The position numbers and the translations under genes were made by a program. From positions 496,001-560,000 of the forward strand of contig NIVC01000200.1 of NCBI GenBank assembly GCA_002269645.1: a DNA stretch of 64,000 nucleotides. The letters run 5' to 3'. The notes beneath the pieces were generated by a model, which was given only the letters and a program-made list of their open reading frames with translations, ran no database searches and was not told the DNA's origin. The DNA comes from Macrostomum lignano. Taxonomy: Eukaryota. Of this stretch, positions 4,258 to 56,272 are shown piece by piece (within the stretch, counting starts at the first letter, position 1; every line of letters begins with the position of its first letter).

Positions 4258-5334
4258 GGTCAAGGTAACTTGATACGCTTGCATAGATATTTAAGTAGCT
4301 AGGTAATCTTGAAAATGAAAAACTTGCAACTTTTCTGGACTTGACATTATGCTCCGGATTAGGTATTTATGGATTAGGGATCAAGGTGTGTTCGTCTCTA
4401 GCTACGCTTTTTCAGCGGACGGAGTTCGCGGATGCTTGCGTCAGACTGCTGGCCGGACTGAACTAGGAAACTGTCGTTGCTGAATAGTATATGCATCAAA
4501 CAAAGGCGCTCTCTCCTTGTCCGCTACCGTCTACGCATTTGATCCTAGCGTATCTCGTCTAAGTAAAAAAAAAGATAGAATACACAACCAACAACAACAA
4601 GGCCGACCTAAATAAGTAAACGAGTGTATATATATAAGGAATTAAATTAAGGGGGGGGGTTGAGTGTACGCTCGTAGATAAGACAAGGAGGGGTGGAGGT
4701 CGCGACGAAAGAAGGAGGCGAGATCGAAGAGCCAATCAGAAGGCAGCGAGGGGAGAGAGCTAGAGAAAATAGCAAGACTGAACTAGGCAGGAACGTTGAG
4801 TAAACAGAGTGAACAGATAAGTGCAGATGGACTAGGAAAGTCGAGTAAAGACTATACATGTACTTAAGAGCCCAAGGGCCGGAGAACAACATTTGGGTAG
4901 AATGGGACAGCCAATCAAAATTGGGTACGCAGTGGGCTAAGGGCAGAAGGAATCTGGTGGGGGTTGGCTTCTTGTAGACGTGATTACGATCCAATGCTTT
5001 CATCTTAGCAACGTGCTTTTACTCGCATTGTGCAGTCTTGCTTGAATAAATTCGTCCGATTGTTTTGCAGCAAAATAGTTTCAAAGTAATCAGTTTTCTT
5101 TATATCAAATCTAGGTTTGCTTCTTCAGTATCTAGGAAATTCTATACAGTTATAACCTATACAAGACCTTATCTTGTGAAAAGCATTGCTTTCTGAGCAG
5201 TCAGTCAGATGCAGAAAGGAACAGACACAATTTCAAGAGGCCCTACGCACCTGATGCTAGCAATTCGAACGAAAAATGCTAATATTTAGCGTCAAGAGTT
5301 GTGACACTAGACTGCTCTCTATACTATAGCTTAC

Positions 5335-6082
5335 CGGGCTCGTGCAAGCTGATGGAGAAGCCCGGGATGTGGTTAATTTCCTCCTCTTCTGTGAGGAAGC
5401 TGTTCGCATCTGAGTACAGCAGCAGGAAAAGCCCCTTGCCCTCCTCCGTCTGTGCAATGCTCCGATCCTCCGGTGTGAATGTGAAGCACAGGAAGCGCTC
5501 GGGGTCGCGGTACTCTGCGAACTCCTTGTCAAGATGGCAGTTTCGCGAGTTGAAAGTACACGCTACCACCGTGTCTCGCAGCGTCTGGAACTGCTGCGAG
5601 CGGTAGGCGACCTGCTTCAGACTGAACATGCCGTCATCGTAGGAGCTGTAGGGATAGTAGGGAATCGCTGGGTGGGACTCGTTCGACTTGATGCGGTACC
5701 AGATCCTCGCCAGGTCGTACGTCATGTCGTACACGGACCGGTTGCTGCCATACCTGTTGGGGATGCTCGAGTTCGAGTAGAAGTAGTGGATGTAGTCATT
5801 CGGACACACTGTCACCGACGGGAACTGGAAGTCGTCCAGACCTTCGAAGGCCTCGGTGTTGACCGGGTACTCCAAGTAGCGGGTGAGCAGCTGGCCAAGG
5901 TGGACGAAGAAGCCGACAACGGTGCCGAGGACGAACAGCAGCCAGACGGCGCGATAGACGAGCGGCCCGTCGCTCAGACGTCGCACGCCGTGGATTGTCG
6001 TCTCCCTGGAGAACACGCGGCCGATCTCGGAGCGACTCGCGTCTATACGGTCAGACAGGTGCATACTTGCTATACTGGCCAA
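5335..6082 (-). CDS. DEG/ENaC (ASIC-like, amiloride-sensitive Na+ channel family) gene, exon 1 of 4
   Basis: ORF 5324..6082 carries the pre-TM1 TTIHG motif, hydrophobic TM1 (AVWLLFVLGTVVGFFV), YLEYP and FPSVTVC, all DEG/ENaC hallmarks. Phase-1 donor CCC G|GTAAG at 5335/5334. Confidence 0.93.
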
Positions 6083-7784: not shown

Positions 7785-8300
7785 GATTAGGGGTGTCTGA
7801 GTGACAGATTAAGGGTGTCTGAGTGACAGACTAGAGGTGTCTGAGTGACAGACTAGAGGTGTCTGAGTGACAGACTAGAGGTGTCTGAGTGACAGACTAG
7901 AGGTGTCTGAGTAACAGACTAGAGGTGTCTGAGTGACAGATTAGGGGTGTCTGAGTGACAGATTAGGGGTGTCTGAGTGACAGATTAGGGGTGTCTGAGT
8001 GACAGATTAGGGGGTGTTTAAGTGACAGACTAGAGGTGTCTGAGTAACAGACTAGAGGTGTCTGAGTGACAGACTAGAGGTGTCTGAGTAACAGACTAGA
8101 GGTGTCTGAGTGACAGACTAGAGGTGTCTGAGTAACAGACTAGAGGTGTCTGAGTGACAGACTAGAGGTGTCTGAGTAACAGACTAGAGGTGTCTGAGTG
8201 ACAGACTAGAGGTGTCTGAGTAACAGACTAGAGGTGTCTGAGTGACAGACTAGAGGTGTCTGAGTAACAGACTAGAGGTGTCTGAGTGACAGACTAGGAG
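7785..8300. repeat. 22-bp minisatellite CTGAGTGACAGACTAGAGGTGT
   Basis: Fills MATH-BTB intron 2. GTGAC and GTAAC variants alternate over 8030-8290. Confidence 0.95.
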
Positions 8301-8385
8301 TGTCTGGGTTGCCAAGTGATTGACAGGGTTCGTAATTGGCAGAAAAGGGACTATTTAAAATCAACAAACCACACTGTACACTGAC

Positions 8386-8995
8386 CTGATACAGGTGGGC
8401 CATCTTCATCAGTTCGAGAGCTCGGTCCTGCAGCTCGGTCCCGCTAATCCTACCGCCGTACAAGTACACAAAGAACAGACGAATAGTTTCCACCGAGAAA
8501 CTATCAATGACAATCTCTGATTCAGTTGATTCTTTACAAGAATTCGAGATCATAGCGGCGAACACCTCGCTGCGGACGCACAGTACGCACTTGTGCACTT
8601 TAATCACGGTATCGCCTGGGGCCAGTATCCTCAGATCGGAGAATGAACCATCAACAAGTAGGCCGCTAAAGTCGCAGGCCTCCATTTGATAGTACACCTG
8701 ATCGGCGTCCGGACCGTCAGCTGCTGTTGGACTGCACGGCCGGACTGACGGGCAGAGATGGAGCCGCGGATTCTGGCACTGCTGACAGCTGTGACACTGA
8801 CGCTCGGAATTGGTGGACGGATCGGCTGACACGGTCTCTTCAATGGAGAATTCAACGTGAGCTCGGACAATGAGATTTTCGCTACTCTCCAGCATCAGGC
8901 GTTGGGCGAACCTGGCGTGACCGAAGCCGCGGTAGCTGTTGTTGTCCCGGCTGGTGATGTGCCGGTTGCGGTTGCTGAGGTCGCCGATCTTTGAC
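8386..8995 (-). CDS. MATH-BTB gene exon 2 (end of MATH, linker, BTB/POZ domain)
   Basis: Acceptor (CT)n cag|G TCA AAG. YRGFGHARF ends MATH. FSDLRIL...IKVHKCVLCVRSEVFAAM...FSVETIRLFFVYLYGG is the BTB signature. Donor TAT CAG|GTCAGT. Confidence 0.9.
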
Positions 8996-18663: not shown

Positions 18664-19001
18664 ATTGAAGTTAGTGCCAAAAAATCCTTGCAAAAAATTC
18701 AACTGTTTAGAAGAAAACACTACTGCAATGTAGCATAGCTGCTTGTAGACAAATTTAGGAAACAAACTCGGAAAAAATATCATACACTAATGCTAAAACA
18801 TATTTCAGCGAGAGATTAGTCGGTCTTCGCGAGTGCACGATTTTCACGAAATTGTGCCTAAAAAGTTTTTTGTGGAATTTTGACCCAAAACCTAAAAACC
18901 ATCATGTACATGTACTCGTAAGCTCGAAGAATAAAGGAAGCTCAACCTATTGCATATGACTGTTGGACATGACATTCACCGGCTTAAAGAGGGGGGGGGG
19001 G

Positions 19002-19878
19002 TAGGGGCGCCGACCAAGAGTCAGGGCCGCGCCGACCAGGACACAGGGATTGCCGACCAGGAGACAGAGGTTGCCGACCAGGAGACAGGGATTGCCGACC
19101 AGGAGACAGAGGTTGCCGACCAGGACACAGGGGTTGCCGACCAGGACACAGGGGTTGCCGACCAGGAGACAGGGGTTGCCGACCAGGACACAGGGGTTAC
19201 CGACAAAGAGTCAGGGCCGCGCCGACCAGGGACAGGATTGTGCCGACCAGGGACAGGATTGTGCCGACCAGGGACAGGATTGTGCCGACCAGGGACAGGA
19301 TTGTGCCGACCAGGGACAGGATTGTGCCGACCAGGGACAGGATTGTGCCGACCAGGGACAGGACCGCGCCGACCAAGTGTCAGGGCCGCGCCGACCAAAT
19401 GTCAGGGCCGCGCCGACCAAGTGTCAGGGCCGCGCCGACCAAGTGTCAGGGCCGCGCCGACCAGGGACAGGGCCGCGCCGACCAGGGACAGGGCCGCGCC
19501 GACCAAGAGTCAGGGCCGCGCCGACCAGGGACAGGGCCGCGCCGACCAGGGACAGGGCCGCGCCGACCAGGGACAGGGCCGCGCCGACCAGGGACAGGGC
19601 CGCGCCGACCAGGGACTGGGCCGCGCCGACCAAGAGTCAGGGCCGCGCCGACCAGGGACAGGGCCGCGCCGACCAAGAGTCAGGGCCGCGCCGACCAGGG
19701 ACAGGGCCGCGCCGACCAAGAGTCAGGGCCGCGCCGACCAGGGACAGGGCCGCGCCGACCAAGAGTCAGGGCCGCGCCGACCAGGGACAGGGCCGCGCCG
19801 ACCAAGAGTCAGGGCCGCGCCGACCAGGGACAGGGCCGGGCCGACCAAGAGACAGGGACGCCGACCAAGAGACAGGGA
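19002..19878. repeat. Compound 21/22-bp GC-rich minisatellite (GCCGACC core)
   Basis: Blocks of variant units GCCGACCAGGAGACAGGG(A/G)TT, GCCGACCAGGGACAGGATTGT, GCCGACCAGGGACAGGGCCGC and GCCGACCAAGAGTCAGGGCCGC. Confidence 0.95.
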
Positions 19879-22800
19879 GCTACTTGAGCTCGCTTCCAAC
19901 AAGTAACCAATTCAATGAACACGGAATCCAGACAGAACGGTTAGTTCATTTGGTAGACTGTTAACTATACTGACGAGCCAATGAGGCTTGCGCTGTAGAT
20001 GCAAAAATGAGGCAAATAGTATTTAGAGCCAGTGTTAAGGACAGACGAGTATTGCTATGAAACAGGCCAGCGATGTTGCTGTAGGGCAGAAGCAGAGTCT
20101 TGTTCGAGATTCGCTTTCATCACCGGCGCCGTACGTTTGTCAACTAAATCAGTATCAGCTCGATAACAACACCAGCTAAGCCGAAGGTAACCTCAACGAA
20201 GCCCTCATTGCAGTATCGCGGTCTTAATTGCGACTTGTATCAGCCAGATAGGCAAACATTGCGACGAACAGGGCTCCGAAGCCGCACTACACCAAGAGCT
20301 CAGCAGAAAGTACTGCTTCAAGTCTAACAGCAGTATCAGTACTAAGCCGACGGAGTCAAATGCCCAGCCCGTTACACGGCAGGAGAGGCGCTGGCCAACG
20401 CCCCCATGCATGTTTAGTCAGATGTGGAAGCGATCGTAGTGGCAAAATGAGAGTAGCGCCTCGATTCCGGAGGTTGTCAAGCGGTACCGTACAGCGTCCA
20501 CTACCACTAGCTGACTGGCCTTGTCTTGAATGAGATTTGTCAACTGGGTGCTCGCGCTGGAGTTGGCCAAGGAGTGACTGTCGCAGACGCGAGTGACTGC
20601 ATGGATTCGTTGTAACCGACACCTGGCTGAAGCATGACATCAGAGTGGCTTTAGTTCGACAAAATCCATTTTCACGCCGGTTGAATCACTTCCTCACTGG
20701 GATGATTCAACGTCGAGTCGTCCTTATCCACAGATCGACAGGGGACGCCGCGTGGTGGAGGCATCGACGCGCATGCATTTGCGATGATGCAGATGAGATA
20801 GCAGAGATTTCAACCGAGCGCTTCAGGATTAGGGGAATTCTGTAGAAATTCTTCCGTAGTCTTGACAGTGCACGGTTTTTTAGCTCAAACAGATTGCCAA
20901 GAACGATGTAATTCTTTCTAGGCATTTTCAAGTGCAATAATTTGATATTTCTTAGTCAGTAGGATCTTATAATGCTAGTAGTACAAGCAAGCACTCTTAT
21001 TGCTAAAACTCCACCATGCCAGAAAATACTTTTACATGTACTTCCGAGAGTAATAAATTAAAATAACTTAATTAGTTGACCCCTTGTCTGCCCCACGTAC
21101 CCTGCAGTACGTTTCGCTAGTAGAGAATCTGCCGTGAGTTATTCCCCGCTGCAATAGACTAGCTATACACTCGCCACGCGGCAGATTTTGTCTGCATTGC
21201 CTCCCCAATGCTTAGTACATATGTAAGCCTTAATAAAGAGATTTAACCGATCGAAAATTTTTGATTGTAACTGCATATCAAATGCATATTTTGAGGGGGG
21301 GGGGTCTCGAGAATTGCTTCTGGATAGCTAGCATATGCATGCTTCTTGAGTTGATTAACCTCATCTAGAAGTCTACTACCATGTTCTGCTCCTGCAGCTT
21401 GCACGCAGTCGGCTTTTTTTTTATTCTTACGAGTATGAACAGTTTTACCTGGTTGCTGAGCTGGCTGAGTTCGTACGACTATATAAGCATACAAGTCTAT
21501 AGTTTAGAGGTCTTGGGCAAGGGAGGCCGCGGCCCCTTTATCCTGGCGCCCCTTGGTCCTGCTAAAGCCCCCGTTGCTGGTGCCTCTCTACTCTCAAATG
21601 AATTGGTGCCAACTCAAATCAAAGGGTAATGGGTCATGAAAAGTATTGCACTTCTCTCGCCCTCACCCAGTCCTTGAATCTATCCCTCGGTTTTCCTCCC
21701 TCGCACACGTACGTCCTTTAACTTTCATTAACCTTTGACGTTAAAATTAATATAAGCATAAAAATCAATGATTAAAACAGATTATTTTTTCAAAAGCATA
21801 GTAATTCAATTACAAAACGATCAAAGTCATTCAATGACTTTCATTATTAATTTTGCGTCTGATTTTCGCATTCATTATTCTGACTGCGGGGTGGGCGGGT
21901 GAATCTGGAGAAAGTTAACAATAGATTGGATAGACACGCTCGTACTAGAAAAAGAGAAAATGTCTATCTACCATTTTTATACACAGCTATAAAAAAACAA
22001 GGAGTATTAGAAATTAAAATTGTTTGAGAAAGCTCAAATAATTAAAACAAAAATTTCAGCTTCGCTTTTTGTTGCAAGCATATAGTACACAAGATGCATA
22101 ATATTGCCATATCGTAAATCTAATCAGAATTTCGATCTGATACGCATTCACAAAAAACTATTTAAACTCTCTCCAGGAGAGAAAATTCGTTTAGGATAAT
22201 TCTAAAGCTCTCTAAAACCAATTGAAACTGCTGGAGAACTATCTCTGAAAAAATATCTATTTTGATGGCATTTACATTATCGTACATATAATTTAATCTG
22301 ATCACGGACGGAAATTGAATGGAATGTAAAAATATAATTTTTGTATATATTAGCAACATTTTACCAATACGAATTAAAACAATAATATTTAAACATCAGT
22401 GGGAAGAATTTAAATAAACAGTATAATTCTTTGCATCACAGACAGAAAACAAAATTAAAAGAAAAGTGTTATTCCAAGCGCTTGAAAATGGACAGCACAT
22501 CGAGTGTAGCGTCAAGCGTTTATACATTCAGACTTAAAATTTTATCGATTGCAGACAAAAATTGGACGGATTTGAAATTTGTTTAAATTGTAATATCAGA
22601 TCAAATATAATATTACGCAATAGTACGTTTAAAAGCTATTAAATATTATTCAGAATATTTAAACAATGATATTATTAATTGCATCACATGCACAAACATT
22701 AAATTAGAAAAAAAGAAGAAAAAACTATATAAGCACTTGAAAATGGACGGAGCGTTGAGTATAGACCACTTCGACTGTTTTATCACATTTTAATTAATAG

Positions 22801-23592: not shown

Positions 23593-24735
23593 TTAAATAC
23601 CCAGCAGGTTGTCAAGCGAACCAACACCCCCGACAAAATTCTCGTCGATCCATTCGTCCTGCTCGTGCTGCATAATGGGGGACGGAGTGCTCGGCAGGCC
23701 GATCATGAGGCCGTTCAAAGAGCCATTCAAGCTGGCAGGATTCTGATGCTGCTGATGCTGATCACCCATGCCACCGTGGTTGGACCCGTTGGTGAGCCAC
23801 CAGCTGGGCGGCGGCAGGGCCATGCCGTGCAGCGTCAAATCCAGCAAGCTGTCAGGATTCGACATGTCAAGCGCCGGCGTCGGGTCAGCCAGTACGCCGT
23901 CGTCATCCGGTTCAAACAGCCAGCGCTCGTCTTCGTCGAGATCTCCGACGCCGATGATGCCGCCTGGTAGAGCTACGAGAGAGTCGGCGCCAACGTTCGA
24001 CACGGCGGTGGCCGCTGTAGAGTCTTTGCCTGGCGTCAGTGAAACTGACGATGCTGTCAGAGTGGAAACTGCGACGGAGGCCGCCGCTGCGGCTGCCGTT
24101 GTCGCCGCTACAGAGACGGCCGTGGCTGCGGCGGCGGCGGCAGAGGCTGCGGCAGCTGCTGACGCTGTTGAAGCCGGCTGAGCCGTCAGGGTCGGGTCGC
24201 GGACTCGAGTCTCCACAGGGCCGCCGCTTAGAGCCATGGACACCCAGTGACCGCTGGAGTCGTGTCTGCCGCCACTGTCCGCATCGACGCTTCTTCCGTT
24301 GCCAAATCTGCTCTCATCCTGGATTCGCCTCAGCTTTGCCGCCGCCGGGTGGTCGCTTAGCAGCGGCGACTCGTCAATTTGTTCATCGTGACTGTGATGC
24401 CGTCGATTGTTGTTGCCATGGAAACCGGCGCCGCCGTTTACAAGAGGCGAATCGAAAAGATGCAATGGCGGTGGCGGCAGCTGATGATGATGCTGAGGCT
24501 GCGTTGAGCGTTGACGCTTTAACAATCCGTGAGATGAAGGCGACACCTGATGATGCTGGTACTGCTGCTGCTGCGCATTAGCCAGCTCAAACTGGCCAGT
24601 GTAGTCGGGATTCAGGCGCCAGTAGCCGCCGCAACTGCCGGCGCTTCCGCTGCCACCACGGCTGGCCGCTTCGTCTTTGCGTCGAGGTACGCGTTGGAAG
24701 CAACGATTGAGGGTCAGGTTGTAGCGGACGGCGCT
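23593..24735 (-). CDS. foxj1: FoxJ1-like gene exon 3 (recognition helix, wings, C-terminal region)
   Basis: Acceptor ctcccag|AGC GCC GTC CGC TAC AAC CTG ACC CTC AAT CGT TGC TTC gives SAVRYNLTLNRCFQRVPRRKDE...GGYWRLNP. In frame with ORF 23593..24546. LDLTLHGMALPPPSWW resembles the invertebrate FoxJ1 C-terminal motif. The joined CDS is 2274 nt (757 aa). Confidence 0.9.
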   Translation of the reverse strand, partial: SAVRYNLTLNRCFQRVPRRKDEAASRGGSGSAGSCGGYWRLNPDYTGQFELANAQQQQYQHHQVSPSSHGLLKRQRSTQPQHHHQLPPPPLHLFDSPLVNGGAGFHGNNNRRHHSHDEQIDESPLLSDHPAAAKLRRIQDESRFGNGRSVDADSGGRHDSSGHWVSMALSGGPVETRVRDPTLTAQPASTASAAAAASAAAAAATAVSVAATTAAAAAASVAVSTLTASSVSLTPGKDSTAATAVSNVGADSLVALPGGIIGVGDLDEDERWLFEPDDDGVLADPTPALDMSNPDSLLDLTLHGMALPPPSWWLTNGSNHGGMGDQHQQHQNPASLNGSLNGLMIGLPSTPSPIMQHEQDEWIDENFVGGVGSLDNLLGI

Positions 24736-24852: not shown

Positions 24853-26351
24853 AAGGGGCGTCGCCACCGGGGGGGGGGACAAGGGGGACATGTCCCCCCA
24901 GTAAAAACTATGGGGGACATGCCAATGCTTTGCCCCACCCCACCCACCCAACTTTGTGATCCGTTATGAAAATCAATTTTGCTTCAGGGTGGCAAAATAT
25001 AGTACCTGCGGCGCTAAAATGAGTACCTGCGGCGCCAAAAGGAGTGCCTGGGGCGCTAAAATGAGGGCATGTGGCACCAAAAGGAGTGCCTGGGGCGCTA
25101 AAATGAGGGCATGTGGCACCAAAAGGAGTGCCTGCGGCGCCATAGAAAATGAGTGCCTGTGGCGCCAAAATGAGTGCCTGCGGCGCCATAGAAAATGAGT
25201 GCCTGCGGCGCCATAGAAAATGAGTGCCTGTGGCGCCAAAATGAGTGCCTGCGGCGCCATAGAAAATGAGTGCCTGCGGCGCCATAGAAAATGAGTGCCT
25301 GCGGCGCCATAGAAAATGAGTGCCTGCGGCGCCATAGAAAATGAGTGCCTGCGGCGCCATAGAAAATGAGTGCCTGCGGCGCCATAGAAAATGAGTGCCT
25401 GTGGCGCCATAGAAAATGAGTGCCTGTGGCGCTAGAATCAGTGCCTGTGGCACCAAAATGAGTGCCTGCGGCGCCAAAGAAAATGAGTGCCTGCGGCGCC
25501 AAAATGAGTGCCTGCGGCGCTAAAACCAGTGCCTGTGGCACCAAAATGAGTGCCTGCGGCGCTAAAACCAGTGCCTGTGGCACCAAAATGAGTGCCTGCG
25601 GCGCTAAAACCAGTGCCTGTGGCACCAAAATGAGTGCCTGCGGCGCTAAAACCAGTGCCTGTGGCGCCAAAATGAGTGCCTGCGGCGCTAAAACCAGTGC
25701 CTGTGGCACCAAAATGAGTGCCTGCGGCGCCATAGAAAATGAGTGCCTGCGGCGCTAAAACCAGTGCCTTTGGCACCAAAATGAGTGCCTGCGGCGCTAA
25801 AATCAGTGCCTGTGGCACCAAAATGAGTGCCTGTGGCACCAAAATGAGTGCCTGCGGCGCCAAAATCAGTGCCTGTGGCACCAAAATGAGTGCCTGCGGC
25901 GCTAAAATCAGTGACTGTGGCACCAAAATGAGTGCCTGCGGCGCTAAAATCAGTGCCTGTGGCACCAAAATGAGTGCCTGCGGCGCCAAAATCAGTGCCT
26001 GTGGCACCAAAATGAGTGCCTGCGGCGCTAAAATCAGTGACTGTGGCACCAAAATGAGTGCCTGCGGCGCTAAAATCAGTGCCTGTAGCACCAAAATAAG
26101 TGCCTGCGGCGCTAAAATCAGTGCCTGTGGCACCAAAATGAGTGCCTGTGGCACCAAAATGAGTGCCTGTGGCACCAAAATGAGAGCCTGCGGTGCTAAA
26201 ATCAGTGCCTGTGGCACCAAAATGAGTGCCTGCGGAGCCAAAATGAGCGCTGATAACACTGATTCTGAAAATAATGTACATGCACACTGTACATGTAGAA
26301 TTCTTGGCTTTGCCCCCCCCCCACCATAAAGTCCATATGGCGACGCTCCTG
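24853..26351. mobile_element. hAT-like MITE expanded by an internal minisatellite (FoxJ1 intron 2)
   Basis: TIR AAGGGGCGTCGCCA / TGGCGACGCTCCTG, degenerate 8-bp TSD TGCCCGAT / CGCCCAAT (6 of 8), and G/C-run subtermini like the 16254 element. Confidence 0.72.
25000..26245. repeat. 21/25-bp minisatellite AAAATGAGTGCCTG(C/T)GGC(G/A)C(C/T) inside the hAT-like MITE
   Basis: Direct reading. It is the source of the overlapping ORFs 24908-26433. Confidence 0.95.
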
Positions 26352-27239: not shown

Positions 27240-28628
27240 AAAACAGATCCCTCAGACACCGCATCAGACCCCTCAGACACCGCATCAGATCCCTCAGATC
27301 CCTTAGCCACCCTTAGCCAAATCCCAATCAGATCCCTCAGACACCGCATCAAATCCCTAAGCCACCGGATCAGATCCCTATCAGATCCATTAGCCACCGC
27401 ATTAGATCATTCAGACACCGCATCAGATCCCTCAGACACCGCATCAGATCCCTCAGACACCGCATCAGATCCCTCAGACACCGCATCAGATCCCTCAGAC
27501 ACCGCATCAGATCCCTCAGACACCGCATCAGATCCCTCAGACACCGCATCAGATCCCTCAGACACCGCATCAAATCCCTAAGCCACCGGATCAGATCCCT
27601 ATCAGATCCATTAGCCACCGCATTAGATCATTCAGACACCGCATCAGATCCCTCAGACACCGCATCAGATCCCTCAGACACCGCATCAGATCCCTCAGAC
27701 ACCGCATCAGATCCCTCAGACACCGCATCAGATCCCTCAGACACCGCATCAGATCCTTCAGACACCGCATCAGATCCCTCAGACACCGCATCAGATCCCT
27801 CAGACACCGCATCAGATCCCTCAGACACCGCATCAGATCCCTCAGACACCGCATCAGATCCCTCAGACACCGCATCAGATCCATCAGACACCGCATCAGA
27901 TCCCTCAGACACCGCATCAGATCCCTCTGACACCGCATCAGATCCCTCAGACACCGCATCAGATCCCTCAGACACCGCATCAGATCCATCAGACACCGCA
28001 TCAGATCCCTCAGACACCGCATCAGATCCCTCAGACACCGCATCAGATCCCTCAGACACCGCATCAGATCCATCAGACACCGCATCAGATCCATCAGACA
28101 CCGCATCAGATCCCTCAGACACCGCATCAGATCCCTCAGACACCGCATCAGATCCATCAGACACCGCATCAGATCCATCAGACACCGCATCAGATCCCTC
28201 AGACACCGCATTAGATCCCTCAGACACCGCATCAGATCCATCAGACACCGCATCAGATCCCTCAGACACCGCATCAAATCCCTAAGCCACCGGATCAGAT
28301 CCCTATCAGATCCATTAGCCACCGCATTAGATCATTCAGACACCGCATCAGATCCATCAGACACCGCATCAAATCCCTAAGCCACCGGATCAGATCCCTA
28401 TCAGATCCATTAGCCACCGCATTAGATCATTCAGACACCGCATCAGATCCCTCAGACACCGCATCAGATCCCTCAGACACCGCATCAGATCCCTCAGACA
28501 CCGCATCAGATCCCTCAGACACCGCATCAGATCCCTCAGACACCGCATCAGATCCCTCAGACACCGCATCAGATCCCTCAGACACCGCATCAGATCCCTC
28601 AGACACCGCATCAGATCCATCAGACACC
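27240..28628. repeat. 21-bp minisatellite CAGATCCCTCAGACACCGCAT with higher-order interruptions
   Basis: Direct reading. A variant block AAATCCCTAAGCCACCGGAT...TTAGATCATT recurs four times. Confidence 0.96.
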
Positions 28629-28634
28629 GTGCTA

Positions 28635-29884: not shown

Positions 29885-30586
29885 CTGCCAGCTTTGATCG
29901 GCCGAACTGCCATAGAATGCAAAATGCGCCCCAATCCAGTCGCAGATTTCCTGCAGAGTCATTTTCGATTTCTTCAGACTTTTCAACGCCATGTAGATTA
30001 GAGTAGAAAAAGAATAGGGCGGTCGGAGGGTCGGATCGGCCGCATATTCCGGATCTGGCTTCGGTGGGATTGGAGGCGCCGATGGTGGCAGTTGAATCAA
30101 CGATTGTTGATGTTGTTGCTGTTGCTGCTGTTGCTGATGCTGTTGCTGTTGCTGATGCTGCTGCTGACTATGATGATAATTATGATGATGCTGCGACGTC
30201 AATAGCGACTGATTTTCATACGGCAACCCACCGTTTGTTGAAGGTTGAAAAGTTGGCGAAGAGATTGCTCGATGCAGGTTGGGCCTCGAATTACCGGAAG
30301 CTGACAGGTAGCTCTGCTGATGCTGCTGCTGTGTATAGAACTGCAGCGAGTCAGCTACCGTTTGCTCGACTAGAATCACCTCGGAGCCAAGCACCGCCAC
30401 CGCCGATGCGGCTGCAGATGCAGCGGCGGCTGCGTCCGCTGCTGCAGCCGCTGCCGCCATAGCGGCCGCCGATGGAGGCTGCGGCGAAGCCGGCGGAGTT
30501 GGCGGAGTCAGCTTCATCAGGTTCATGTTCTGCGAGGTTGATAACGAGACGCTAGTTGCAGGATTATGCACCATACACACCGTCGG
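29885..30586 (-). CDS. foxj1: FoxJ1-like gene exon 2 (N-terminal half of forkhead domain)
   Basis: Acceptor ctttag|CCG. EYAADPTLRPPYSFSTLIYMALKSLKKSKMTLQEICDWI...ADQSWQ parallels FoxJ1 KPPYSYATLICMAM..KITL..IYKWI..ADPTWQ. Donor CAG|GTGAGG. Confidence 0.92.
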
Positions 30587-30812: not shown

Positions 30813-31241
30813 TTGTAGCCAGCCTAGGTTAGTCAGATCCATGTCCGTCGCACCGCTGCTACCACCATTTCCAGTCACCGCGGCGGCGGCCGCGGCAGCT
30901 GCCAACTTGCCAACAGCTGTCGGTGAAAACAGAGCGTCGTGGTTAACTGCTGCTGCGGCCATCACAGCTGCCGCAGTTTGCTGCTGTTGCTGTTGCTGTT
31001 GCTGAACCTGCGTGTCTCTTACAGCCCAGTTGTGTCTCAGCCGTTGAGCCAACTGCTCTCTGCTCATATTACTGCCGTTCGTACTACCACCGCTGTTACT
31101 AGTAGTGTTACTATTCTGTCTCTGTGGCTGTCGCGGCTTGCCAAAGCGTTGGTGAATGTGTAAATGCTGATGATGCGGCGGAGGCTGCGGTGCGAGCGAC
31201 AAGGATCGCCTCAGCAGCAACGGACTGGAAGCGGCAGTCAT
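30813..31241 (-). CDS. foxj1: FoxJ1-like forkhead transcription factor, exon 1 of 3
   Basis: PolyQ/polyA N-terminus ending in DLTNLGWLQ, matching the FoxJ1 N-terminal LTSLxWLQ motif. Donor CAA|GTAAGC is phase 0. Confidence 0.82.
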
Positions 31242-32070: not shown

Positions 32071-32189
32071 TTCATTTAGGCTTGTGTGCATGAGAATTGG
32101 CCCAGGTGCGATTCATACCCTGATAGCCAGCCCCTAAGGCTCAGAGAGTGTACATGCCTGATGATCAGACAGTAAGGGCTGCTGCACAC

Positions 32190-33375
32190 CTGCATATCTC
32201 CGACACTGCATATCTCCGACACTTCATATCTCCGACACTTCATATCTCCGACACTTCATATCTCCGACACTTCATATCTCCGACACTTCACATCTCCGAC
32301 ACTTCACATCTCCGACACTTCATATCTCCGACACTTCATATCTCCGACAGTTCATATCTCTGACAATTCATATCTCCGACACTTCATATCTCCGACACTG
32401 CATATCTCCGACACTTCATATCTCTAACACTTCATATCTCCGACACTTCATATCCCCGACACTTCATATCTCCGACACTTCATATCTCTGACAATTCATA
32501 TCTCCGACACTGCATATCTCCGACACTTCACATCTCCGACACTTAATATCTCCGACACTTCATATCTCTGACACTTCACATCTCCGACACTTCATATCTC
32601 TGACACTTCATATCTCCGACACTTCATATCTCTGACACTTCATATCTCCGACAGTTCATATCTCTGACAATTCATATCTCCGACACTGCATATCTCCGAC
32701 ACTTCACATCTCCGACACTTCATATCTCCGACACTTCATATCTCTGACACTTCATATCTCCGACACTTCATATCTCTGACACTTCACATCTCCGACACTC
32801 CATATCTCTGACACTTCATATCTCCGACACTTCATATCTCTGACAATTCATATCTCCGACACTGCATATCTCCGACACTTCACATCTCCGACACTTCATA
32901 TCTCCGACACTTCATATCTCTGACAATTCATATCTCCGACACTGCATATCTCCGACACTTCACATCTCCGACACTTCATATCTCCGACACTTCATATCTC
33001 TGACACTTCATATCTCCGACACTTCATATCTCTGACACTTCACATCTCCGACACTCCATATCTCCGACACTTCATATCCCCGACACTTCATATCTCTGAC
33101 AATTCATATCTCCGACACTTCATATCCCCGACACTTCATATCTCTGACAATTCATATCTCCGACACTGCATATCTCCGACACTTCACATCTCCGACACTT
33201 CACATCTCCGACACTCCATATCTCCGACACTTCATATCCCCGAAACTTCATATCTCTGACAATTCATATCTCCGACACTTCATATCCCCGACACTTCATA
33301 TCCCCGACACTTCATATCTCCGACAGTTCATATCTCTGACAATTCATATCTCCGACACTTCATGTCTCCGACACT
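32190..33375. repeat. 16-bp minisatellite CACTTCATATCTCCGA
   Basis: About 74 copies, followed by a few inverted units at 33376-33455. Confidence 0.96.
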
Positions 33376-38200: not shown

Positions 38201-38539
38201 AGTCATGATTCATGAATGTCCAGAAGTAAGTGAAGTGAATATAGTGTGACCTATAGCTCAAGAACGATTTGCTAGACGATTTGGCATGGAAGATGAGAGC
38301 CCTGATTCAGATGGCTCATCAGATGCAGAATACGAATCCAGTAGAGATACAAGCTGTGAAAACCCACAGATTTTTAAACCACTGAATTCTAATTCCCGGA
38401 ACTATTTTTGCATAGATTCTAAATTTGAAGTCATGCTCAAACAAAAACTTGTTAACAGTTAGGAAAAAGGCAAAGATGGGAGTAATGCATGTTAAACTAA
38501 GATTTGAGGCCTTTGCAAATTCTCCCCATTCCTCAATCT

Positions 38540-39240
38540 TCTCATCCTCTTTTTCTTTTCTCTCTCATCCCTTATCCCTTCTCTCTTTCCTCTCCTCTCT
38601 CCTCTCTTTCCTCTCCTCTCCTATCTCTTCTGTCTCCTCTCTACATTCTTATCTCTCCTCTCGTCTCTCTCCATTCCACTCTACTCTCTCATCTTATCTT
38701 CCCTCTCGTCTCTCTCCACTCTACTCTCTCATCTTATCTCTCCTCACTTTTCTACTCTCTCATCTCTCCTCTCTTCAGTCTCCTCTCATCTCCTCTTTAT
38801 CCTCTCTTCAGTCTCCTCTCATCTCCTCTTTATCCTCTTTTCTCTCATCTACTCTCTCCTCTTTCCTCTTTCCTCTCTTCTGATCTCATCCATCATCTTT
38901 TCTTTCCTCTTTCCTCTAATCTCCTCTTCTCTCTCATCTCTTTTTCCTCCCTCAGCTTTTCTCTCCTCTTCTATCTTTTCTCCCATCGCATTGCTCACCT
39001 CTCCTCTGTTTGCTTATCTCTAATCTTCTACTCCCTCTACTTTGAAGTAAGAAAATATGCACATATTTTTGCTGAAGATAAGAGGAGAGAAGAGGGCATT
39101 GAGGAGAAAGGGTAGAGAGAAAGGGGGAGAAGAGAGGAGAGTAAAAATGAGAGGAAAGAGAAGAGGGAAAAGGGGGGAGAGAGAGAAGAGGGGAGGCAAG
39201 GTAGAGAAGAAGAGAGAGATGAGAGTTGAAGAGACACCAA
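38540..39240. repeat. Polypyrimidine (CT-rich) tract followed by polypurine (GA-rich) tract
   Basis: 38540-39040 is almost purely C/T and 39075-39235 almost purely A/G. Confidence 0.9.
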
Positions 39241-43969: not shown

Positions 43970-45801
43970 CTGTGAGAATCGCTCAGGTAGACAAACAGTT
44001 CAGTGAGAATCGCTCAGGTAGATAAGAAGTCAGTAAGAATCGCTCAGGTAGACAAAGAGTTCAGTGAGAATCACTCAGGTAGACAAGAAGTCAGTGAGAA
44101 TCACTCAGGTAGACAAGAAGTCAGTGAGAATCACTCAGGTAGACAAGAAGTCAGTGAGAATCGCTCAGGTAGACAAGAAGTCAGTGAGAATCGCTCAGGT
44201 AGACAAGAAGTCAGTGAGAATCACTCAGGTAGACAAGAAGTCAGTGAGAATCGCTCAGGTAGACAAGAAGTCAGTGAGAATCGCTCAGGTAGACAAGAAG
44301 TCAGTGAGAATCACTCAGGTAGACAAGAGTTCAGTGAGAATCGCTCAGGTAGACAAGAAGTCAGTGAGAATCGCTCAGGTAGACAAGAAGTCAGTGAGAA
44401 TCACTCAGGTAGACAAGAGTTCAGTGAAAATCGCTCAGGTAGACAAGAAGTCAGTGAGAATCACTCAGGTAGACAAGAAGTCAGTGAGAATCGCTCAGGT
44501 AGACAAGAAGTCAGTGAGAATCGCTCAGGTAGACAAGAAGTCAGTGAGAATCACTCAGGTAGACAAGAAGTCAGTGAGAATCACTCAGGTAGACAAGAAG
44601 TCAGTGAGAATCGCTCAGGTAGACAAGAAGTCAGTGAGAATCACTCAGGTAGACAAGAAGTCAGTGAGAATCGCTCAGGTAGACAAGAAGTCAGTGAGAA
44701 TCACTCAGGTAGACAAGAGTTCAGTGAAAATCGCTCAGGTAGACAAGAAGTCAGTGAGAATCACTCAGGTAGACAAGAAGTCAGTGAGAATCGCTCAGGT
44801 AGACAAGAAGTCAGTGAGAATCACTCAGGTAGACAAGAGTTCAGTGAAAATCGCTCAGGTAGACAAGAAGTCAGTGAGAATCGCTCAGGTAGACAAGAAG
44901 TCAGTGAGAATCACTCAGGTAGACAAGAAGTCAGTGAGAATCGCTCAGGTAGACAAGAAGTCAGTGAGAATCGCTCAGGTAGACAAGAAGTCAGTGAGAA
45001 TCACTCAGGTAGACAAGAAGTCAGTGAGAATCGCTCAGGTAGACAAGAAGTCAGTGAGAATCGCTCAGGTAGACAAGAAGTCAGTGAGAATCACTCAGGT
45101 AGACAAGAAGTCAGTGAGAATCGCTCAGGTAGACAAGAAGTCAGGGAGAATCACTCAGGTAGACAAGAAGTCAGTGAAAATCACTCAGGTAGACAAGAAG
45201 TCAGGGAGAATCACTTAGGTAGACAAGAAGTCAGTGAGAATCACTCAGGTAGACAAGAAGTCAGGGAGAATCACTCAGGTAGACAAGAGTTCAGTGAAAA
45301 TCGCTCAGGTAGACAAGAAGTCAGTGAGAATCGCTCAGGTAGACAAGAAGTCAGGGAGAATCACTCAGGTAGACAAGAAGTCAGGGAGAATCACTCAGGT
45401 AGACAAGAGTTCAGTGAAAATCGCTCAGGTAGACAAGAAGTCAGTGAGAATCACTCAGGTAGACAAGAAGTCAGGGAGAATCACTCAGGTAGACAAGAGT
45501 TCAGTGAAAATCGCTCAGGTAGACAAGAAGTCAGTGAGAATCACTCAGGTAGACAAGAAGTCAGTGAGAATCGCTTAGGTAGACAAGAAGTCAGTGAGAA
45601 TCACTCAGGTAGACAAGAAGTCAGTGAGAATCGCTTAGGTAGACAAGAAGTCAGTGAGAATCACTCAGGTAGACAAGAAGTCAGTGAGAATCGCTCAGGT
45701 AGACAAGAAGTCAGTGAGAATCGCTCAGGTAGACAAGAAGTCAGTGAGAATCGCTCAGGTAGACAAGAGTTCAGTGAAAATCGCTCAGGTAGACAAGAAG
45801 T
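43970..45801. repeat. 30-bp minisatellite GTGAGAATC(A/G)CTCAGGTAGACAAGAAGTCA (PP2A-A intron 1)
   Basis: About 61 copies. It is the source of the 601-aa and 384-aa ORFs. Confidence 0.97.
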
Positions 45802-45867
45802 CCATTAGATTCATCATTTGTCCAATGACTCTACCGAAAGCAAATCTGCCGATCTTGCATCTACTAG

Positions 45868-47480: not shown

Positions 47481-47556
47481 CCAGCCTCTTATCTCTGGTT
47501 ACTTACCCTCGTGTTAGTATTCCTTAATACAAAGCCGAACCCGTCGCGACCTTCAG

Positions 47557-47994
47557 ACGATCTCTACTGTTCGTCCCGCCGCGCTGGTTGCCGCCTAATC
47601 GTCCCCTGTTACGCCAAGATCAGCTCAAACGATATTCGCAGCGAATTAAAATCTCGCCTAATTAATGCAGCCAATCAAGAGGAAGAGATTCTGTTAGTGC
47701 GCGAGGCCGCTGTCACCCAGCTGGGGCTTCTGGCACAGTCGGCTAGCAAAGACCGGGCCGAAATCCTCGCCAGCTTGGTCACCCTGTCTAACGACAATCA
47801 TCGCGACATTCGAGCCGCCAGCGTTCGCTCCCTGCTAGACCTGGTTAAACTGTACGGCGAGAAGGAGCTGGAGTCCACCGTCTACCCTGTGTTGGAGCGC
47901 TACGCTGAGGATTCGCACAGGAATACCAGACAGAACTTTGCCGCTCATATTGCCGAGTTTCAGACTGTTTTCAATAAGATTGGAAAGCAGCTAG
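47557..47994 (+). CDS. ppp2r1a: PP2A-A-like exon 4
   Basis: Acceptor cttcag|[23 protein letters not shown] aligns to DWFTSRTSACGLFSVCYPR. Covers HEAT4-7. Donor G|gtgagt. Confidence 0.9.
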
Positions 47995-47999
47995 GTGAG

Positions 48000-48035
48000 T
48001 GTGTCTGTCTGTCTGTATGTGTCTGTCTGTCTTCC

Positions 48036-48100
<65 letters not shown>

Positions 48101-48103
48101 TCC

Positions 48104-48176
<73 letters not shown>

Positions 48177-48191
48177 TCCTGTCTGTCTTCC

Positions 48192-48232
<41 letters not shown>

Positions 48233-48235
48233 TCC

Positions 48236-48288
<53 letters not shown>

Positions 48289-55944: not shown

Positions 55945-56272
<328 letters not shown>

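What the first reader, a model, noticed from the sequence alone, without database searches (positions are those of the whole stretch)
24706..24735. FoxJ1-like factor with a rewritten DNA-recognition helix (WQ|SAVRYNLTLN instead of WQ|NSIRHNLSLN)
Seen: the acceptor that keeps the frame gives AGC GCC GTC CGC TAC AAC CTG ACC. Known: in forkhead domains the helix-3 Asn, Arg, His and Ser of NSIRHNLS make the major-groove base contacts, and Asn and His are nearly invariant. Here Asn becomes Ser, His becomes Tyr and Ser becomes Thr. The rest is clearly FoxJ1-like (LTNLGWLQ, RPPYSF, ADQSWQ, LDLT...PPxWW) and the ORF is intact over 757 codons. Inference: this is a paralog of the motile-ciliogenesis master regulator with a new DNA specificity, or a non-DNA-binding or dominant-negative modulator.
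Basis: partly seen in the sequence, partly recalled or inferred. Interest (0 to 1): 0.8.

Follow-up and report, generated by a model that had tools for sequence, protein, structure and literature searches.

The report
Flatworm FoxJ1 paralog, degenerate DNA-reading helix
This is a real, expressed gene of the flatworm Macrostomum lignano: a copy of the cilia regulator FoxJ1, from an old flatworm-wide paralog lineage, that has replaced the two residues nearly all forkhead proteins use to read DNA bases while keeping the rest of the protein under selection.

Summary
Window 24706-24735 (minus strand) encodes SAVRYNLTLN, spliced in frame to ...ADQSWQ across a 5.1-kb intron. This is helix 3 of a Pfam forkhead domain. 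A second M. lignano locus has identical codons and splice sites. The transcriptome-derived GenBank model PAA62899.1 uses the same junction, and dN/dS between the two copies is 0.16.

The gene is a FoxJ1-family member. It has the DDSLT.L.WLQ-type and LDLT..WW motifs, the conserved WQ| intron and FoxJ1 best hits. It groups 200/200 with a flatworm lineage I call "group B" (Schistosoma, Opisthorchis, Paragonimus, Calicophoron, Mesocestoides). Every group B member lacks the helix-3 Asn and His. The same parasites also carry a canonical FoxJ1 ("group A", [10 protein letters not shown]).

In group B, helix 3 is the least conserved segment (45% against 97.5% in canonical FoxJ1). The RCFQRVPRRKE strand is the most conserved (90%). 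The wing-2 KKRR patch and the Tyr that buttresses the Arg are also gone.

So the "paralog" reading is supported, and the exact sequence is one state of a lineage-wide degeneration. I infer that canonical RYAAAYA reading is lost and that the protein acts through partner-assisted or altered binding. This was not tested. Interest is moderate.

The parts
30813..31241 (-). Exon 1 (codons 1-143). It runs from ATG at 31241 to ...GGC TGG CTA CAA|GTAAGC. It holds the FoxJ1 N-terminal motifs LAQRLRHNW (31026-31052) and DMDLTNLGWLQ (30813-30845).
   Evidence: Sequence and translation. The same exon is present in the second locus L001 at 98.4% identity. The motifs are invariant across group B (A1) and present in a canonical FoxJ1.
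29885..30529 (-). Exon 2 (codons 144-358). The acceptor is cgcag|AAC ATG AAC and the donor TGG CAG|GTGAGG. It holds the first half of the forkhead domain, RPPYSF...ADQSWQ (29885-30025). This includes Cys339 (29942-29944), which replaces the Tyr that buttresses the helix-3 Arg.
   Evidence: P0002 starts exactly at NMNLMKL. FOXC2 Tyr99 mapping comes and PMC6468292.
24736..29884 (-). Intron 2 (5149 nt, phase 0, GT..AG). It splits the forkhead domain between WQ and helix 3. It holds two minisatellite arrays (24993-26247, 21/42-nt unit; 27380-28629, 21-nt unit). It has no coding-like forkhead piece.
   Evidence: for the sequence and repeats; for the absence of an alternative exon. A canonical FoxJ1 gene has an intron at the same position and phase (TGGCAG|GTAAGC ... 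cccag|AACTCCATTCGACAC, L002). Many FoxJ1 gene fragments end at ...PSWQ V...
24706..24735 (-). The finding itself: codons 359-368, SAVRYNLTLN, the recognition helix H3. Ser359 stands for the base-reading Asn and Tyr363 for the base-reading His. Arg362 and Leu365 are retained. Thr366 stands for the phosphate-contacting Ser.
   Evidence: The AF2 model places it in a confident helix, model residues 49-60.
23593..24735 (-). Exon 3 (codons 359-738 plus TAA). It contains:
- helix 3;
- the S2/wing-1 stem RCFQRVPRRKDE (24670-24705);
- a Gly/Ser-rich wing-1 loop about 9 residues longer than in other FoxJ1 proteins, a length seen only in M. lignano in this sample (24625-24669);
- YWRLNPDY;
- the wing-2 position without the basic patch (ELANAQQQQYQHHQ, 24547-24588);
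- the FoxJ1 C-terminal motifs SLLDLTLHG..PPSWW (23797-23850) and EWIDENF..SLDNLLGI (23596-23655).

Best explanation
[quoted passage not shown] It encodes a 738-residue FoxJ1-family protein. It is the Macrostomum member of an old flatworm paralog lineage of FoxJ1 (group B). This lineage is also present in trematodes and cestodes, and in trematodes it sits beside a canonical FoxJ1 (group A) in the same species.

**What changed.** In group B the forkhead fold is kept, along with the helix-3 Arg, the hydrophobic core, the RCFQRVPRRK(D/E)E strand and the FoxJ1-specific N- and C-terminal motifs. The residues that read and grip canonical RYAAAYA DNA have been replaced and are no longer conserved:
- Asn to Ser;
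- His to Tyr;
- the Tyr buttressing the Arg to Cys;
- a phosphate-contacting Tyr to Phe;
- the wing-2 KKRR patch lost.

**Inferred mechanism.** The protein is still a functional nuclear regulator of the FoxJ1 type, probably in ciliated cells. It no longer recognises the forkhead motif through the canonical Asn/His contacts. It most likely binds DNA with low or altered base specificity, through Arg362 and the basic wing-1 stem, and depends on a partner such as RFX to reach its targets.

**Shown and inferred.** Gene structure, family assignment, paralogy in flatworms, purifying selection and the shift of constraint away from helix 3 are shown. DNA-binding behaviour, partner dependence and a cilia role are inferred.
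For: **Gene and domain.**
- Gene model and splice sites.
- Pfam Forkhead, E 5e-25.
- The AF2 model has mean pLDDT 82.6 with a confident H3 and a disordered wing-1 insert. Foldseek best matches are the FOXC2, FOXG1, FOXA and FOXN1 DNA-binding domains at TM 0.70-0.74.

**Species and expression.**
- Matches are PAA62899.1 and UniRef A0A1I8GW87, both M. lignano.
- The GenBank annotation of that assembly is RNA-seq and transcriptome derived (PMC5730564).

**Selection.** The second locus L001 has exons 97-99% identical and introns 88-94% identical. dN is 0.0048 and dS 0.0306. There are no non-synonymous changes in the forkhead domain.

**FoxJ1 family.**
- The nearest canonical hits are named FoxJ1 in Saccoglossus, Lytechinus, Tubulanus and Watersipora, plus an unnamed forkhead protein of Dimorphilus.
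- The N- and C-terminal motifs are shared.
- The WQ| phase-0 intron is identical.

**Group B.**
- Trichobilharzia, Calicophoron, Opisthorchis, Clonorchis, Paragonimus, Schistosoma and Mesocestoides proteins all lack the Asn and His.
- The neighbour-joining tree gives monophyly with the window gene in 200/200 bootstraps.

**Group A.** Canonical paralogs occur in the same species, consistent with a duplication in the rhabditophoran ancestor.

**Shift of constraint.**

| Segment | Canonical FoxJ1 | Group A | Group B |
|---|---|---|---|
| H3, mean pairwise identity | 0.975 | 0.96 | 0.45 |
| RCFQRVPRRKE stem | 0.75 | 0.87 | 0.90 |

**Contact positions.**
- 7 of 8 FOXC2-defined contact or buttress positions are changed in group B, against 14 of 38 other ancestrally invariant columns (Fisher one-sided p = 0.012).
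- The wing-2 KKRR patch is absent.

**Literature.**
- Asn118, Arg121 and His122 give the base contacts, and Tyr99 and Asn118 hold Arg121 (PMC6468292).
- All human FOX proteins keep the His (PMC12135187).
- FOXJ1 binding at ciliome promoters depends on RFX2 in Xenopus (as cited in PMC10393296).
Against: - No binding, expression or phenotype data exist for this gene.
- Ser and Tyr can both form hydrogen bonds, so a specific contact, old or new, is not excluded. FOXC2 H122K keeps strong FKH binding and H122N only lowers it (PMC12135187). Loss of His alone therefore does not abolish binding.
- The contact list comes from one structure (FOXC2) and is short. The enrichment test is modest (p = 0.012), and some changes are conservative (Lys to Arg, Ser to Thr).
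- The tree is neighbour-joining on 88 columns with long branches. The sister relation of groups A and B is weak (77/200).
- I could not show a canonical FoxJ1 in M. lignano itself. In principle this gene could be its main FoxJ1.
- The RFX link is by analogy with canonical FoxJ1 in other animals.
Confidence: 0.42

Rival explanations
1. New, defined DNA specificity. Ser359, Tyr363 and Arg362 read a different motif directly. One candidate is an FHL-like GACGC-type site, as in yeast Fhl1, which has Ser at the Asn position. The paralog would then control its own target set.
For: - Yeast Fhl1 carries Ser at the Asn position and is FHL-specific (PMC7062188).
- Forkhead domains have changed specificity several times (papers found).
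- Ser and Tyr keep hydrogen-bonding capacity.
- The domain is under purifying selection, with identical protein in both loci.
Against: - FHL binders share a PDGW motif before helix 3. This gene has ADQSW, like FKH-type FoxJ1.
- The two positions are not conserved among group B orthologs (S/D/G/E/L and Y/Q/K). No shared new reading code is visible.
- The wing-2 basic patch, which stabilises binding, is lost.
Confidence: 0.22
2. Canonical function essentially retained. The domain still binds RYAAAYA-type sites, perhaps more weakly. The protein would be an ordinary ciliogenic FoxJ1 with tolerated substitutions.
For: - Arg362, the fold and most of the core are intact.
- FOXC2 H122K binds the FKH motif well.
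- A fish FoxJ1-A-like protein (Parambassis ranga, P0104) also has NSIRYNLSFN.
- All FoxJ1 accessory motifs are kept.
Against: - The Asn gives the bidentate contact to the invariant adenine and is described as ultra-conserved. It is missing here together with the His, the Tyr99 buttress, the Tyr77 hydroxyl and wing-2 KKRR.
- Helix 3 is the least conserved segment in the lineage. That would not be expected if it still read the same motif.
Confidence: 0.15
3. DNA-binding-dead modulator. The forkhead fold serves only as a protein-interaction scaffold. The protein titrates partners of the canonical FoxJ1 (dominant negative) or acts as a co-factor without touching DNA.
For: - Several DNA-contact elements have degenerated at once.
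- Acidic residues (D/E) occupy the Asn position in trematode orthologs.
- The FoxJ1 N- and C-terminal motifs, candidate partner or activation surfaces, are strongly conserved.
Against: - The most conserved part of the domain is a very basic strand, RCFQRVPRRK, even more basic than in canonical FoxJ1. The helix-3 Arg is invariant. Both suit continued nucleic-acid contact.
- No evidence exists for antagonism.
Confidence: 0.15
4. Artefact or decaying gene. The variant codons would be an assembly or annotation error, or the locus would be a pseudogene left by the recent genome duplication.
For: M. lignano is a recent polyploid with many redundant copies. The intron is full of minisatellites.
Against: - Two separate loci in two assemblies carry identical forkhead codons and splice sites.
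- The ORF is intact over 738 codons.
- dN/dS is 0.16, and exons are more conserved than introns.
- A transcript-derived protein model exists.
- Orthologs with the same architecture occur across Neodermata.
Confidence: 0.02

Closest known systems
Canonical FoxJ1 (e.g. Saccoglossus kowalevskii FoxJ1 NP_001158438.1; vertebrate FOXJ1; planarian Smed-FoxJ1-4)
   Same: - Forkhead domain 42-53% identical.
- N-terminal LA.R.R.NW and DDSLT.L.WLQN.N motifs, LDLT(I/V)..W motif and acidic/Leu-rich C-terminus.
- Phase-0 intron between WQ and helix 3.
- Best database hits.
   Different: - Canonical proteins have NSIRHNLSLN (97.5% mean identity), the Tyr buttress, PPYSY, wing-1 GKGGFW and wing-2 KKRR. This gene has SAVRYNLTLN, Cys, PPYSF, a longer Gly/Ser-rich wing-1 loop and no wing-2 basic patch.
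- It is much longer (738 against about 420-470 residues), with poly-Q and poly-A tracts.
- A role in ciliogenesis is untested.
Flatworm 'group B' FoxJ1 paralogs. These are unnamed or hypothetical proteins, e.g. Opisthorchis viverrini T265_07109 (XP_009170816.1), Schistosoma intercalatum CAH8582415.1, Paragonimus westermani KAF8569712.1, Calicophoron daubneyi CAL8088507.1 and Mesocestoides corti VDD77378.1.
   Same: - Full-length architecture.
- Shared derived residues: LIYM, SLKK, (E/D)IC.WI, HFAFY and RCFQRVPRRK(D/E)E.
- Loss of the Asn and His.
- 200/200 bootstrap grouping.
   Different: - The actual helix-3 residues differ: DVIRQHL, EALRQNL, DIIRKHL, LALRQTL against SAVRYNL. The M. lignano helix is the closest of them to the canonical one.
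- M. lignano alone has the long wing-1 loop and lacks even the weak NN(K/R)IS.KF wing-2 remnant.
Flatworm 'group A' FoxJ1 (e.g. Schistosoma haematobium 'Forkhead box protein J1-B' A0A094ZSQ0; Calicophoron CAL8088361.1; Hymenolepis VDL60771.1)
   Same: FoxJ1 N-terminal motif, flatworm origin and long proteins. They co-occur in the same genomes as group B.
   Different: They keep [23 protein letters not shown], the Tyr buttress and a CRR wing-2 remnant. H3 identity is 0.96.
Saccharomyces cerevisiae Fhl1 and the FHL (GACGC) specificity class (FOXN1/4)
   Same: Fhl1 has Ser at the position of the helix-3 Asn (PMC7062188). It is a precedent that this substitution can go with a different specificity.
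   Different: Fhl1, FOXN1 and FOXN4 keep the His and have a PDGW motif before helix 3. This gene has Tyr and ADQSW. There is no phylogenetic relation beyond the forkhead superfamily.
Diverged ecdysozoan cilia regulators: Drosophila CG32006 (FoxJ1), Fd3F (FoxT), C. elegans FKH-8
   Same: They are examples of fast-evolving FoxJ1-like or forkhead factors that work with RFX on ciliome genes (PMC10078917, PMC3414849, PMC10393296).
   Different: They belong to different lineages and have experimental support. Their helix-3 sequences were not examined here, except that lepidopteran FoxJ1-like hits keep NSIRHNLSLN.

Membership tests
Forkhead (Fox) superfamily | Winged-helix forkhead domain (Pfam PF00250) with three helices, the S2/S3 hairpin and wing 1 | tested here: met
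   Pfam 87.8 bits against a cut-off of 27. The AF2 model gives H1, H2, H3 and two strands at pLDDT 82.6. Foldseek TM is 0.70-0.74 to the FOXC2, FOXG1, FOXA and FOXN1 DNA-binding domains.
Forkhead (Fox) superfamily | N(S/A)IRH base-reading motif in helix 3. Asn and His are present in all human FOX proteins. | tested here: not met
   The gene has S-A-V-R-Y. Only the Arg is kept. For the motif see PMC6468292 and PMC12135187.
FoxJ1 subfamily (evolutionary membership) | Closest relatives are FoxJ1 proteins. The gene groups with FoxJ1 to the exclusion of FoxJ2/3. | tested here: met
   The top canonical hits are annotated FoxJ1 from four phyla, plus an unnamed Dimorphilus forkhead protein. The NJ tree rooted on FoxJ2/3 nests group B inside FoxJ1. 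This is a distance method with long branches, so support is limited.
FoxJ1 subfamily (evolutionary membership) | FoxJ1-specific motifs outside the domain: N-terminal DDSLT(S/N)L.WLQ, LDLT(I/V)...W and an acidic/Leu C-terminal motif | tested here: met
   The gene has DMDLTNLGWLQ, LLDLTLHG..PPSWW and SLDNLLGI. The same motifs occur in most canonical FoxJ1 hits and in all group B proteins.
FoxJ1 subfamily (evolutionary membership) | Phase-0 intron between the WQ codons and helix 3 | tested here: met
   The window has TGGCAG|GTGAGG...cccag|AGCGCC. The canonical FoxJ1 locus L002 has TGGCAG|GTAAGC...cccag|AACTCC. More than ten FoxJ1 gene fragments end at PSWQ followed by V (GT.).
FoxJ1 subfamily (functional membership: motile-cilia master regulator) | Binds RYAAAYA-type sites, activates motile-cilia genes and is required for ciliogenesis | not testable with these tools
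   No expression, binding or knock-down data for this gene were found. The contact residues argue against canonical binding.
Flatworm group B FoxJ1 paralog lineage (defined here) | Shared derived residues (LIYM, (E/D)IC.WI, HFAFY, RCFQRVPRRK(D/E)E), loss of the helix-3 Asn and His, and monophyly | tested here: met
   Alignments A1 and A3. Bootstrap 200/200.
Paralog status within M. lignano (a canonical FoxJ1 is also present) | A second FoxJ1 gene with a canonical helix in the same genome | tested here: inconclusive
   None lies in the window. My database searches did not return one from M. lignano. Both paralog groups are present in the same trematode species, and two FoxJ1 paralogs are reported in M. 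cliftonense and M. hystrix.
FHL (GACGC) specificity class | PDGW motif before helix 3, plus an Asn in the alternate rotamer or Ser (as in Fhl1), with the His retained | tested here: not met
   Ser is present. The preceding motif is ADQSW, not PDGW, and the His is replaced by Tyr.

The most novel reading that the evidence does not exclude
A FoxJ1 paralog lineage as old as the rhabditophoran flatworms has given up base reading through the recognition helix. It survives under selection as a partner-tethered regulator (for example through RFX), or as one that recognises targets through its wing-1 stem. This would be a natural case of a forkhead domain whose constraint moved from helix 3 to the RCFQRVPRRKE strand, with M. 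lignano (transgenesis available) as a tractable model.
Probability: 0.3. Interest if true: 0.7.

Novelty: new variant of a known kind. Interest (0 to 1): 0.5.

Why it matters
**Why the residues matter.** The helix-3 Asn and His are treated as near-universal in forkhead proteins. The His is present in all human FOX proteins, and the Asn is called 'ultra-conserved'.

**What is unusual here.** A whole lineage of FoxJ1 paralogs spans free-living and parasitic flatworms. It keeps the fold, the accessory motifs and purifying selection but lets exactly these positions drift. This is a natural experiment on two questions:
- what a forkhead domain can do without canonical base reading;
- how duplicated master regulators diverge.

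**Correction to the record.** FoxJ1 was reported missing from M. lignano (Pascual-Carreras et al. 2021, as noted in the 2025 preprint). It is present, in at least two near-identical loci.

**Practical points.**
- M. lignano has transgenesis and RNAi, so the hypotheses are testable.
- The orthologs in Schistosoma, Opisthorchis and other parasites are currently 'hypothetical' or mis-named (one is called 'rhoptry protein, putative').

**Limits.** Flatworm FoxJ1 duplication and its long branches are already published, and no function is shown here.

Tried and rejected
**Wrong first guess.** I first took the organism for an insect, because of poly-Q/poly-A tracts and GC of 43%. I read the fd3F/CG32006 literature. 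The cluster look-up showed the source is Macrostomum lignano. Those papers remain useful only as analogies.

**Searches that gave little.**
- The search for homologous proteins with a trimmed chimeric query found only a 165-residue fragment.
- With the full-length alignment it was swamped by low-complexity words.
- With trimmed conserved blocks it returned some cestode and trematode fragments and many exon-1 fragments, but no planarian or further Macrostomum proteins.
- The spliced model could not be looked up in the look-up of encoding contigs, and P0001 was not on record.
- A full-text search for the helix-3 strings (RYNLTLN and similar) found no paper.
- The supplement search of PMC8918179 gave no sequences.
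- A promoter scan was uninformative filler for a eukaryotic gene.

**Failed runs.** Two tree scripts failed, one for lack of an outgroup and one by time-out. The reduced data set then worked.

**A lead that did not pan out.** P0134 ([16 protein letters not shown], also Asn to Ser) looked like a possible Macrostomum or flatworm paralog. It is an intronless gene on a metagenome eukaryote scaffold, unrelated to flatworms.

**Ideas rejected.**
- An alternative exon encoding NSIRHNLS in the 5-kb intron: none found.
- Assembly error or pseudogene.
- Membership of FoxJ2/3 or FoxN: the motifs and tree do not fit.
Full report
**1. The observation**

On the minus strand, 24735..24706 reads AGC GCC GTC CGC TAC AAC CTG ACC CTC AAT, which is SAVRYNLTLN. 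It is preceded by a polypyrimidine tract and cccag. Upstream, an exon ends ...GCC GAT CAA AGC TGG CAG|GTGAGG at 29885.

The full model has three exons:
- exon 1, 31241-30813;
- exon 2, 30529-29885;
- exon 3, 24735-23593.

It gives 738 codons plus TAA. Pfam finds one Forkhead domain at residues 312-407 (87.8 bits, E 5e-25). HMMER alignments to solved FOXN3, FOXC2 and FOXL2 domains put SAVRYNLTLN column for column on NS(I/V)RHNLSLN.

Regex and tblastn scans of all six frames of the 64 kb find no other forkhead-like piece. The 5.1-kb intron consists largely of two minisatellite arrays and hides no alternative canonical exon.

Transcript-based protein models and all orthologs support WLQ|NMNLMKL.

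**2. Source, and whether the feature is real**

An exhaustive HMMER search of 1.84 billion representative proteins gave a 100% match over the forkhead-domain query. Cluster look-up names it as Macrostomum lignano: UniRef A0A1I8GW87, with GenBank PAA62899.1 in the same cluster. Both proteins show the same two splice junctions.

The GenBank annotation of that assembly was built from RNA-seq and a de novo transcriptome (PMC5730564). This is indirect transcript support.

PAA62899.1 is encoded at a different locus, L001. Compared with the window:
- exons are 97.4-99.0% identical and introns and flanks about 88-94.5%;
- splice sites are identical;
- 15 substitutions are synonymous and 8 non-synonymous (dN 0.0048, dS 0.0306, ratio 0.16);
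- there is no amino-acid change in the forkhead domain.

Two loci in two assemblies with the same codons rule out an assembly error. The ratio and the intact ORF rule out a decaying copy.

**3. Family**

The nearest canonical relatives (about 50% identity in the domain) are annotated FoxJ1 in a hemichordate, sea urchins, a nemertean and a bryozoan. An unnamed forkhead protein of the annelid Dimorphilus also sits among them.

Outside the domain the protein carries:
- LAQRLRHNW;
- DMDLTNLGWLQNMNLMKLTPPTPPASP;
- LLDLTLHG..PPSWW;
- a ..LDNLLGI C-terminus.

The first three have clear counterparts in canonical FoxJ1 proteins. One canonical gene reads LAHRFRQNW...DDSLTSLNWLQNLNIMKMATPTPPASP.

The intron position is also shared. 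A canonical FoxJ1 locus has TGGCAG|GTAAGC ... cccag|AAC TCC ATT CGA CAC. More than ten FoxJ1 gene fragments in the database break off at ...PSWQ followed by V.

The AF2 model is a normal winged helix. H3 is confident and the wing-1 insert disordered. Its best structural matches are FOX DNA-binding domains.

**4. The lineage**

The top hits after the self-match are long proteins from Trichobilharzia, Calicophoron, Opisthorchis/Clonorchis, Paragonimus, several Schistosoma species and the cestode Mesocestoides. Further fragments come from S. mansoni, Schistocephalus and Dibothriocephalus.

They align with the window protein over five blocks. They share derived residues absent from other FoxJ1 proteins: LIYM, (E/D)IC.WI, HFAFY and RCFQRVPRRK(D/E)E.

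None keeps the helix-3 Asn or His. Examples are DVIRQHL, GALRQDL, EALRQNL, ETLRQNL, DIIRKHL, DIIRQNL and LALRQTL. I call this lineage group B.

A second flatworm set, group A, keeps [23 protein letters not shown]. It occurs in the same species, for example Calicophoron daubneyi, Schistosoma intercalatum and S. curassoni. One member is named 'Forkhead box protein J1-B'.

A bootstrapped neighbour-joining tree was built from 41 domains and 88 columns, rooted on FoxJ2/3:

| Grouping | Bootstrap support |
|---|---|
| Group B including the window gene | 200/200 |
| Group A | 170/200 |
| The window gene as sister to neodermatan group B | 134/200 |
| Groups A and B as sisters | 77/200 |

This fits the published inference of one FoxJ1 duplication in the rhabditophoran ancestor, the two FoxJ1 paralogs found in M. 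cliftonense and M. hystrix, and the 'long branches' of flatworm FoxJ1 (bioRxiv 10.1101/2025.01.09.632129). According to that preprint, FoxJ1 had earlier been reported missing from macrostomorphs, then represented only by M. lignano (Pascual-Carreras et al. 2021). That paper's own text was searched.

I could not retrieve a group A gene from M. lignano with the tools available.

**5. What changed in the domain**

I mapped the window onto FOXC2, whose contacts are described in PMC6468292.

| FOXC2 residue | Role | Window residue |
|---|---|---|
| Lys72 | phosphate | Arg312 |
| Ser76 | phosphate | Ser316 |
| Tyr77 | phosphate | Phe317 |
| Tyr99 | holds Arg121 | Cys339 |
| Asn118 | bidentate contact to adenine; also holds Arg121 | Ser359 |
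| Arg121 | base and van der Waals contacts | Arg362 |
| His122 | thymine | Tyr363 |
| Ser125 | phosphate | Thr366 |
| Arg163/Arg164 | wing 2, phosphate | absent |

At the wing-2 position the window has ELANAQQQQ. Canonical FoxJ1 has ENG.FKKRR and group A has AKCRR.

Among 46 columns that are at least 90% conserved in canonical plus group A FoxJ1, 7 of the 8 contact or buttress columns are changed in group B. The figure for the other columns is 14 of 38 (one-sided Fisher p = 0.012).

Mean pairwise identity by segment shows an inversion:

| Segment | Canonical FoxJ1 | Group A | Group B |
|---|---|---|---|
| H3 | 0.975 | 0.96 | 0.45 (lowest of its segments) |
| S2/wing-1 stem (RCFQRVPRRKE) | 0.75 | 0.87 | 0.90 (highest of its segments) |

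Even within schistosomatids, helix 3 varies (DVIRQHLTL, DIIRKHLTS, DIIRQNLTF) while the stem is invariant. M. lignano adds a Gly/Ser-rich wing-1 loop about nine residues longer than in the other proteins.

**6. Interpretation**

The shown facts are:
- an intact, selected, transcribed FoxJ1 paralog;
- membership of a lineage in which the base-reading positions are not conserved, while the fold, the Arg, a basic strand and the FoxJ1 accessory motifs are.

Because the replaced positions differ between orthologs, a single new reading code is less likely than relaxed base reading.

Because the invariant parts are basic and the protein keeps FoxJ1's non-domain motifs, I favour continued action on chromatin with help from a partner. 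RFX is the obvious candidate, since FOXJ1 occupancy at ciliome promoters depends on RFX2 in Xenopus and forkhead-RFX cooperation recurs in flies and worms.

This mechanism is inferred. I give it about 0.4.

The rivals are:
- a new specificity, with a precedent in yeast Fhl1 (Ser at the Asn position, GACGC binding), although the PDGW determinant is absent here;
- retained canonical binding, since FOXC2 H122K still binds and a fish FoxJ1 paralog also has His to Tyr;
- a DNA-free modulator;
- an artefact, which is essentially excluded.

**7. Novelty and score**

Flatworm FoxJ1 duplication is published. The specific loss of Asn and His, and the shift of constraint in one paralog lineage, were not described in the papers I could search. 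The term 'recognition helix' does not occur in the 2025 preprint, and the motif strings occur in no indexed paper.

I rate it a new variant of a known kind, of moderate interest (0.5). It is instead one member of a lineage-wide relaxation, and no function has been tested.

Noticed in passing
window 24993-26247 and 27380-28629 (intron 2 of the FoxJ1 gene): Two large minisatellite arrays with 21/42-nt units, about 57 and about 60 copies at 82-93% matches. They make up roughly half of the 5.1-kb intron and create long spurious ORFs on both strands. The sister locus L001 has a shorter intron (about 4.5 kb).
   Followed up: partly
window about 32150-33000 (upstream of exon 1); L001 6600-9450: The region just upstream of the gene is a tandem repeat. 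The ORFs read ...HISDTSYLRHFISPTL... repeatedly. It matches dozens of staggered positions over about 2.8 kb in the sister locus at about 90% identity, so the promoter-proximal region is a variable satellite.
   Followed up: no
window 18950-19964, 38425-39115, 44003-45808, 51883-53337, 55897-56292, 60086-60791, 61397-62764: Many further minisatellite and low-complexity arrays give long repetitive ORFs in several frames. The window is unusually rich in tandem repeats, in line with the repeat-rich M. lignano genome.
   Followed up: no
window 5324-6082 (-): An exon-sized ORF with an amiloride-sensitive sodium channel (ASC/DEG-ENaC, PF00858) match, E 1.4e-28, covering the N-terminal half of the profile. 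It is a neighbouring channel gene.
   Followed up: partly
window 8272-8895 (-); 47511-51422 (+); 58788-60089 (+): Other neighbouring genes:
- a BTB/POZ-domain ORF (E 5e-15);
- several exons with HEAT repeats (PPP2R1A-like or adaptin-like, weak);
- an F-box-like plus FBO_C ORF of 433 residues with poly-Q and acidic tracts.
   Followed up: partly
P0104 (Parambassis ranga FoxJ1-A-like), P0128, and P0030/P0034 (Gouania willdenowi FoxJ1-B-like): Some fish FoxJ1 extra copies also carry non-canonical helix 3: NSIRYNLSFN, NSIRCNLSFN and KAIRWNLSTK. The first has the same His to Tyr change as here. Helix-3 erosion after FoxJ1 duplication may therefore recur outside flatworms.
   Followed up: no
P0078, P0084, P0086, P0094, P0115, P0129, P0135, P0136 (origin unknown, ENA/JGI): A set of FoxJ1-like proteins has a 4-residue insert (VTFK or ITFK) exactly between WQ and NSIRH, at the conserved intron position. 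It looks like a shifted donor site or an annotation artefact rather than a real insertion.
   Followed up: no
P0191 (Schistosoma mansoni): The S. mansoni group B fragment is annotated 'rhoptry protein, putative'. This looks like a mis-annotation of a forkhead-domain protein.
   Followed up: no
L003 (ENA ERZ23486787 scaffold), P0134: An intronless FoxJ1-like gene on a metagenome eukaryote scaffold has the DDSLTNLNWLQ motif and [16 protein letters not shown]. It is an independent Asn to Ser change with the His retained.
   Followed up: partly
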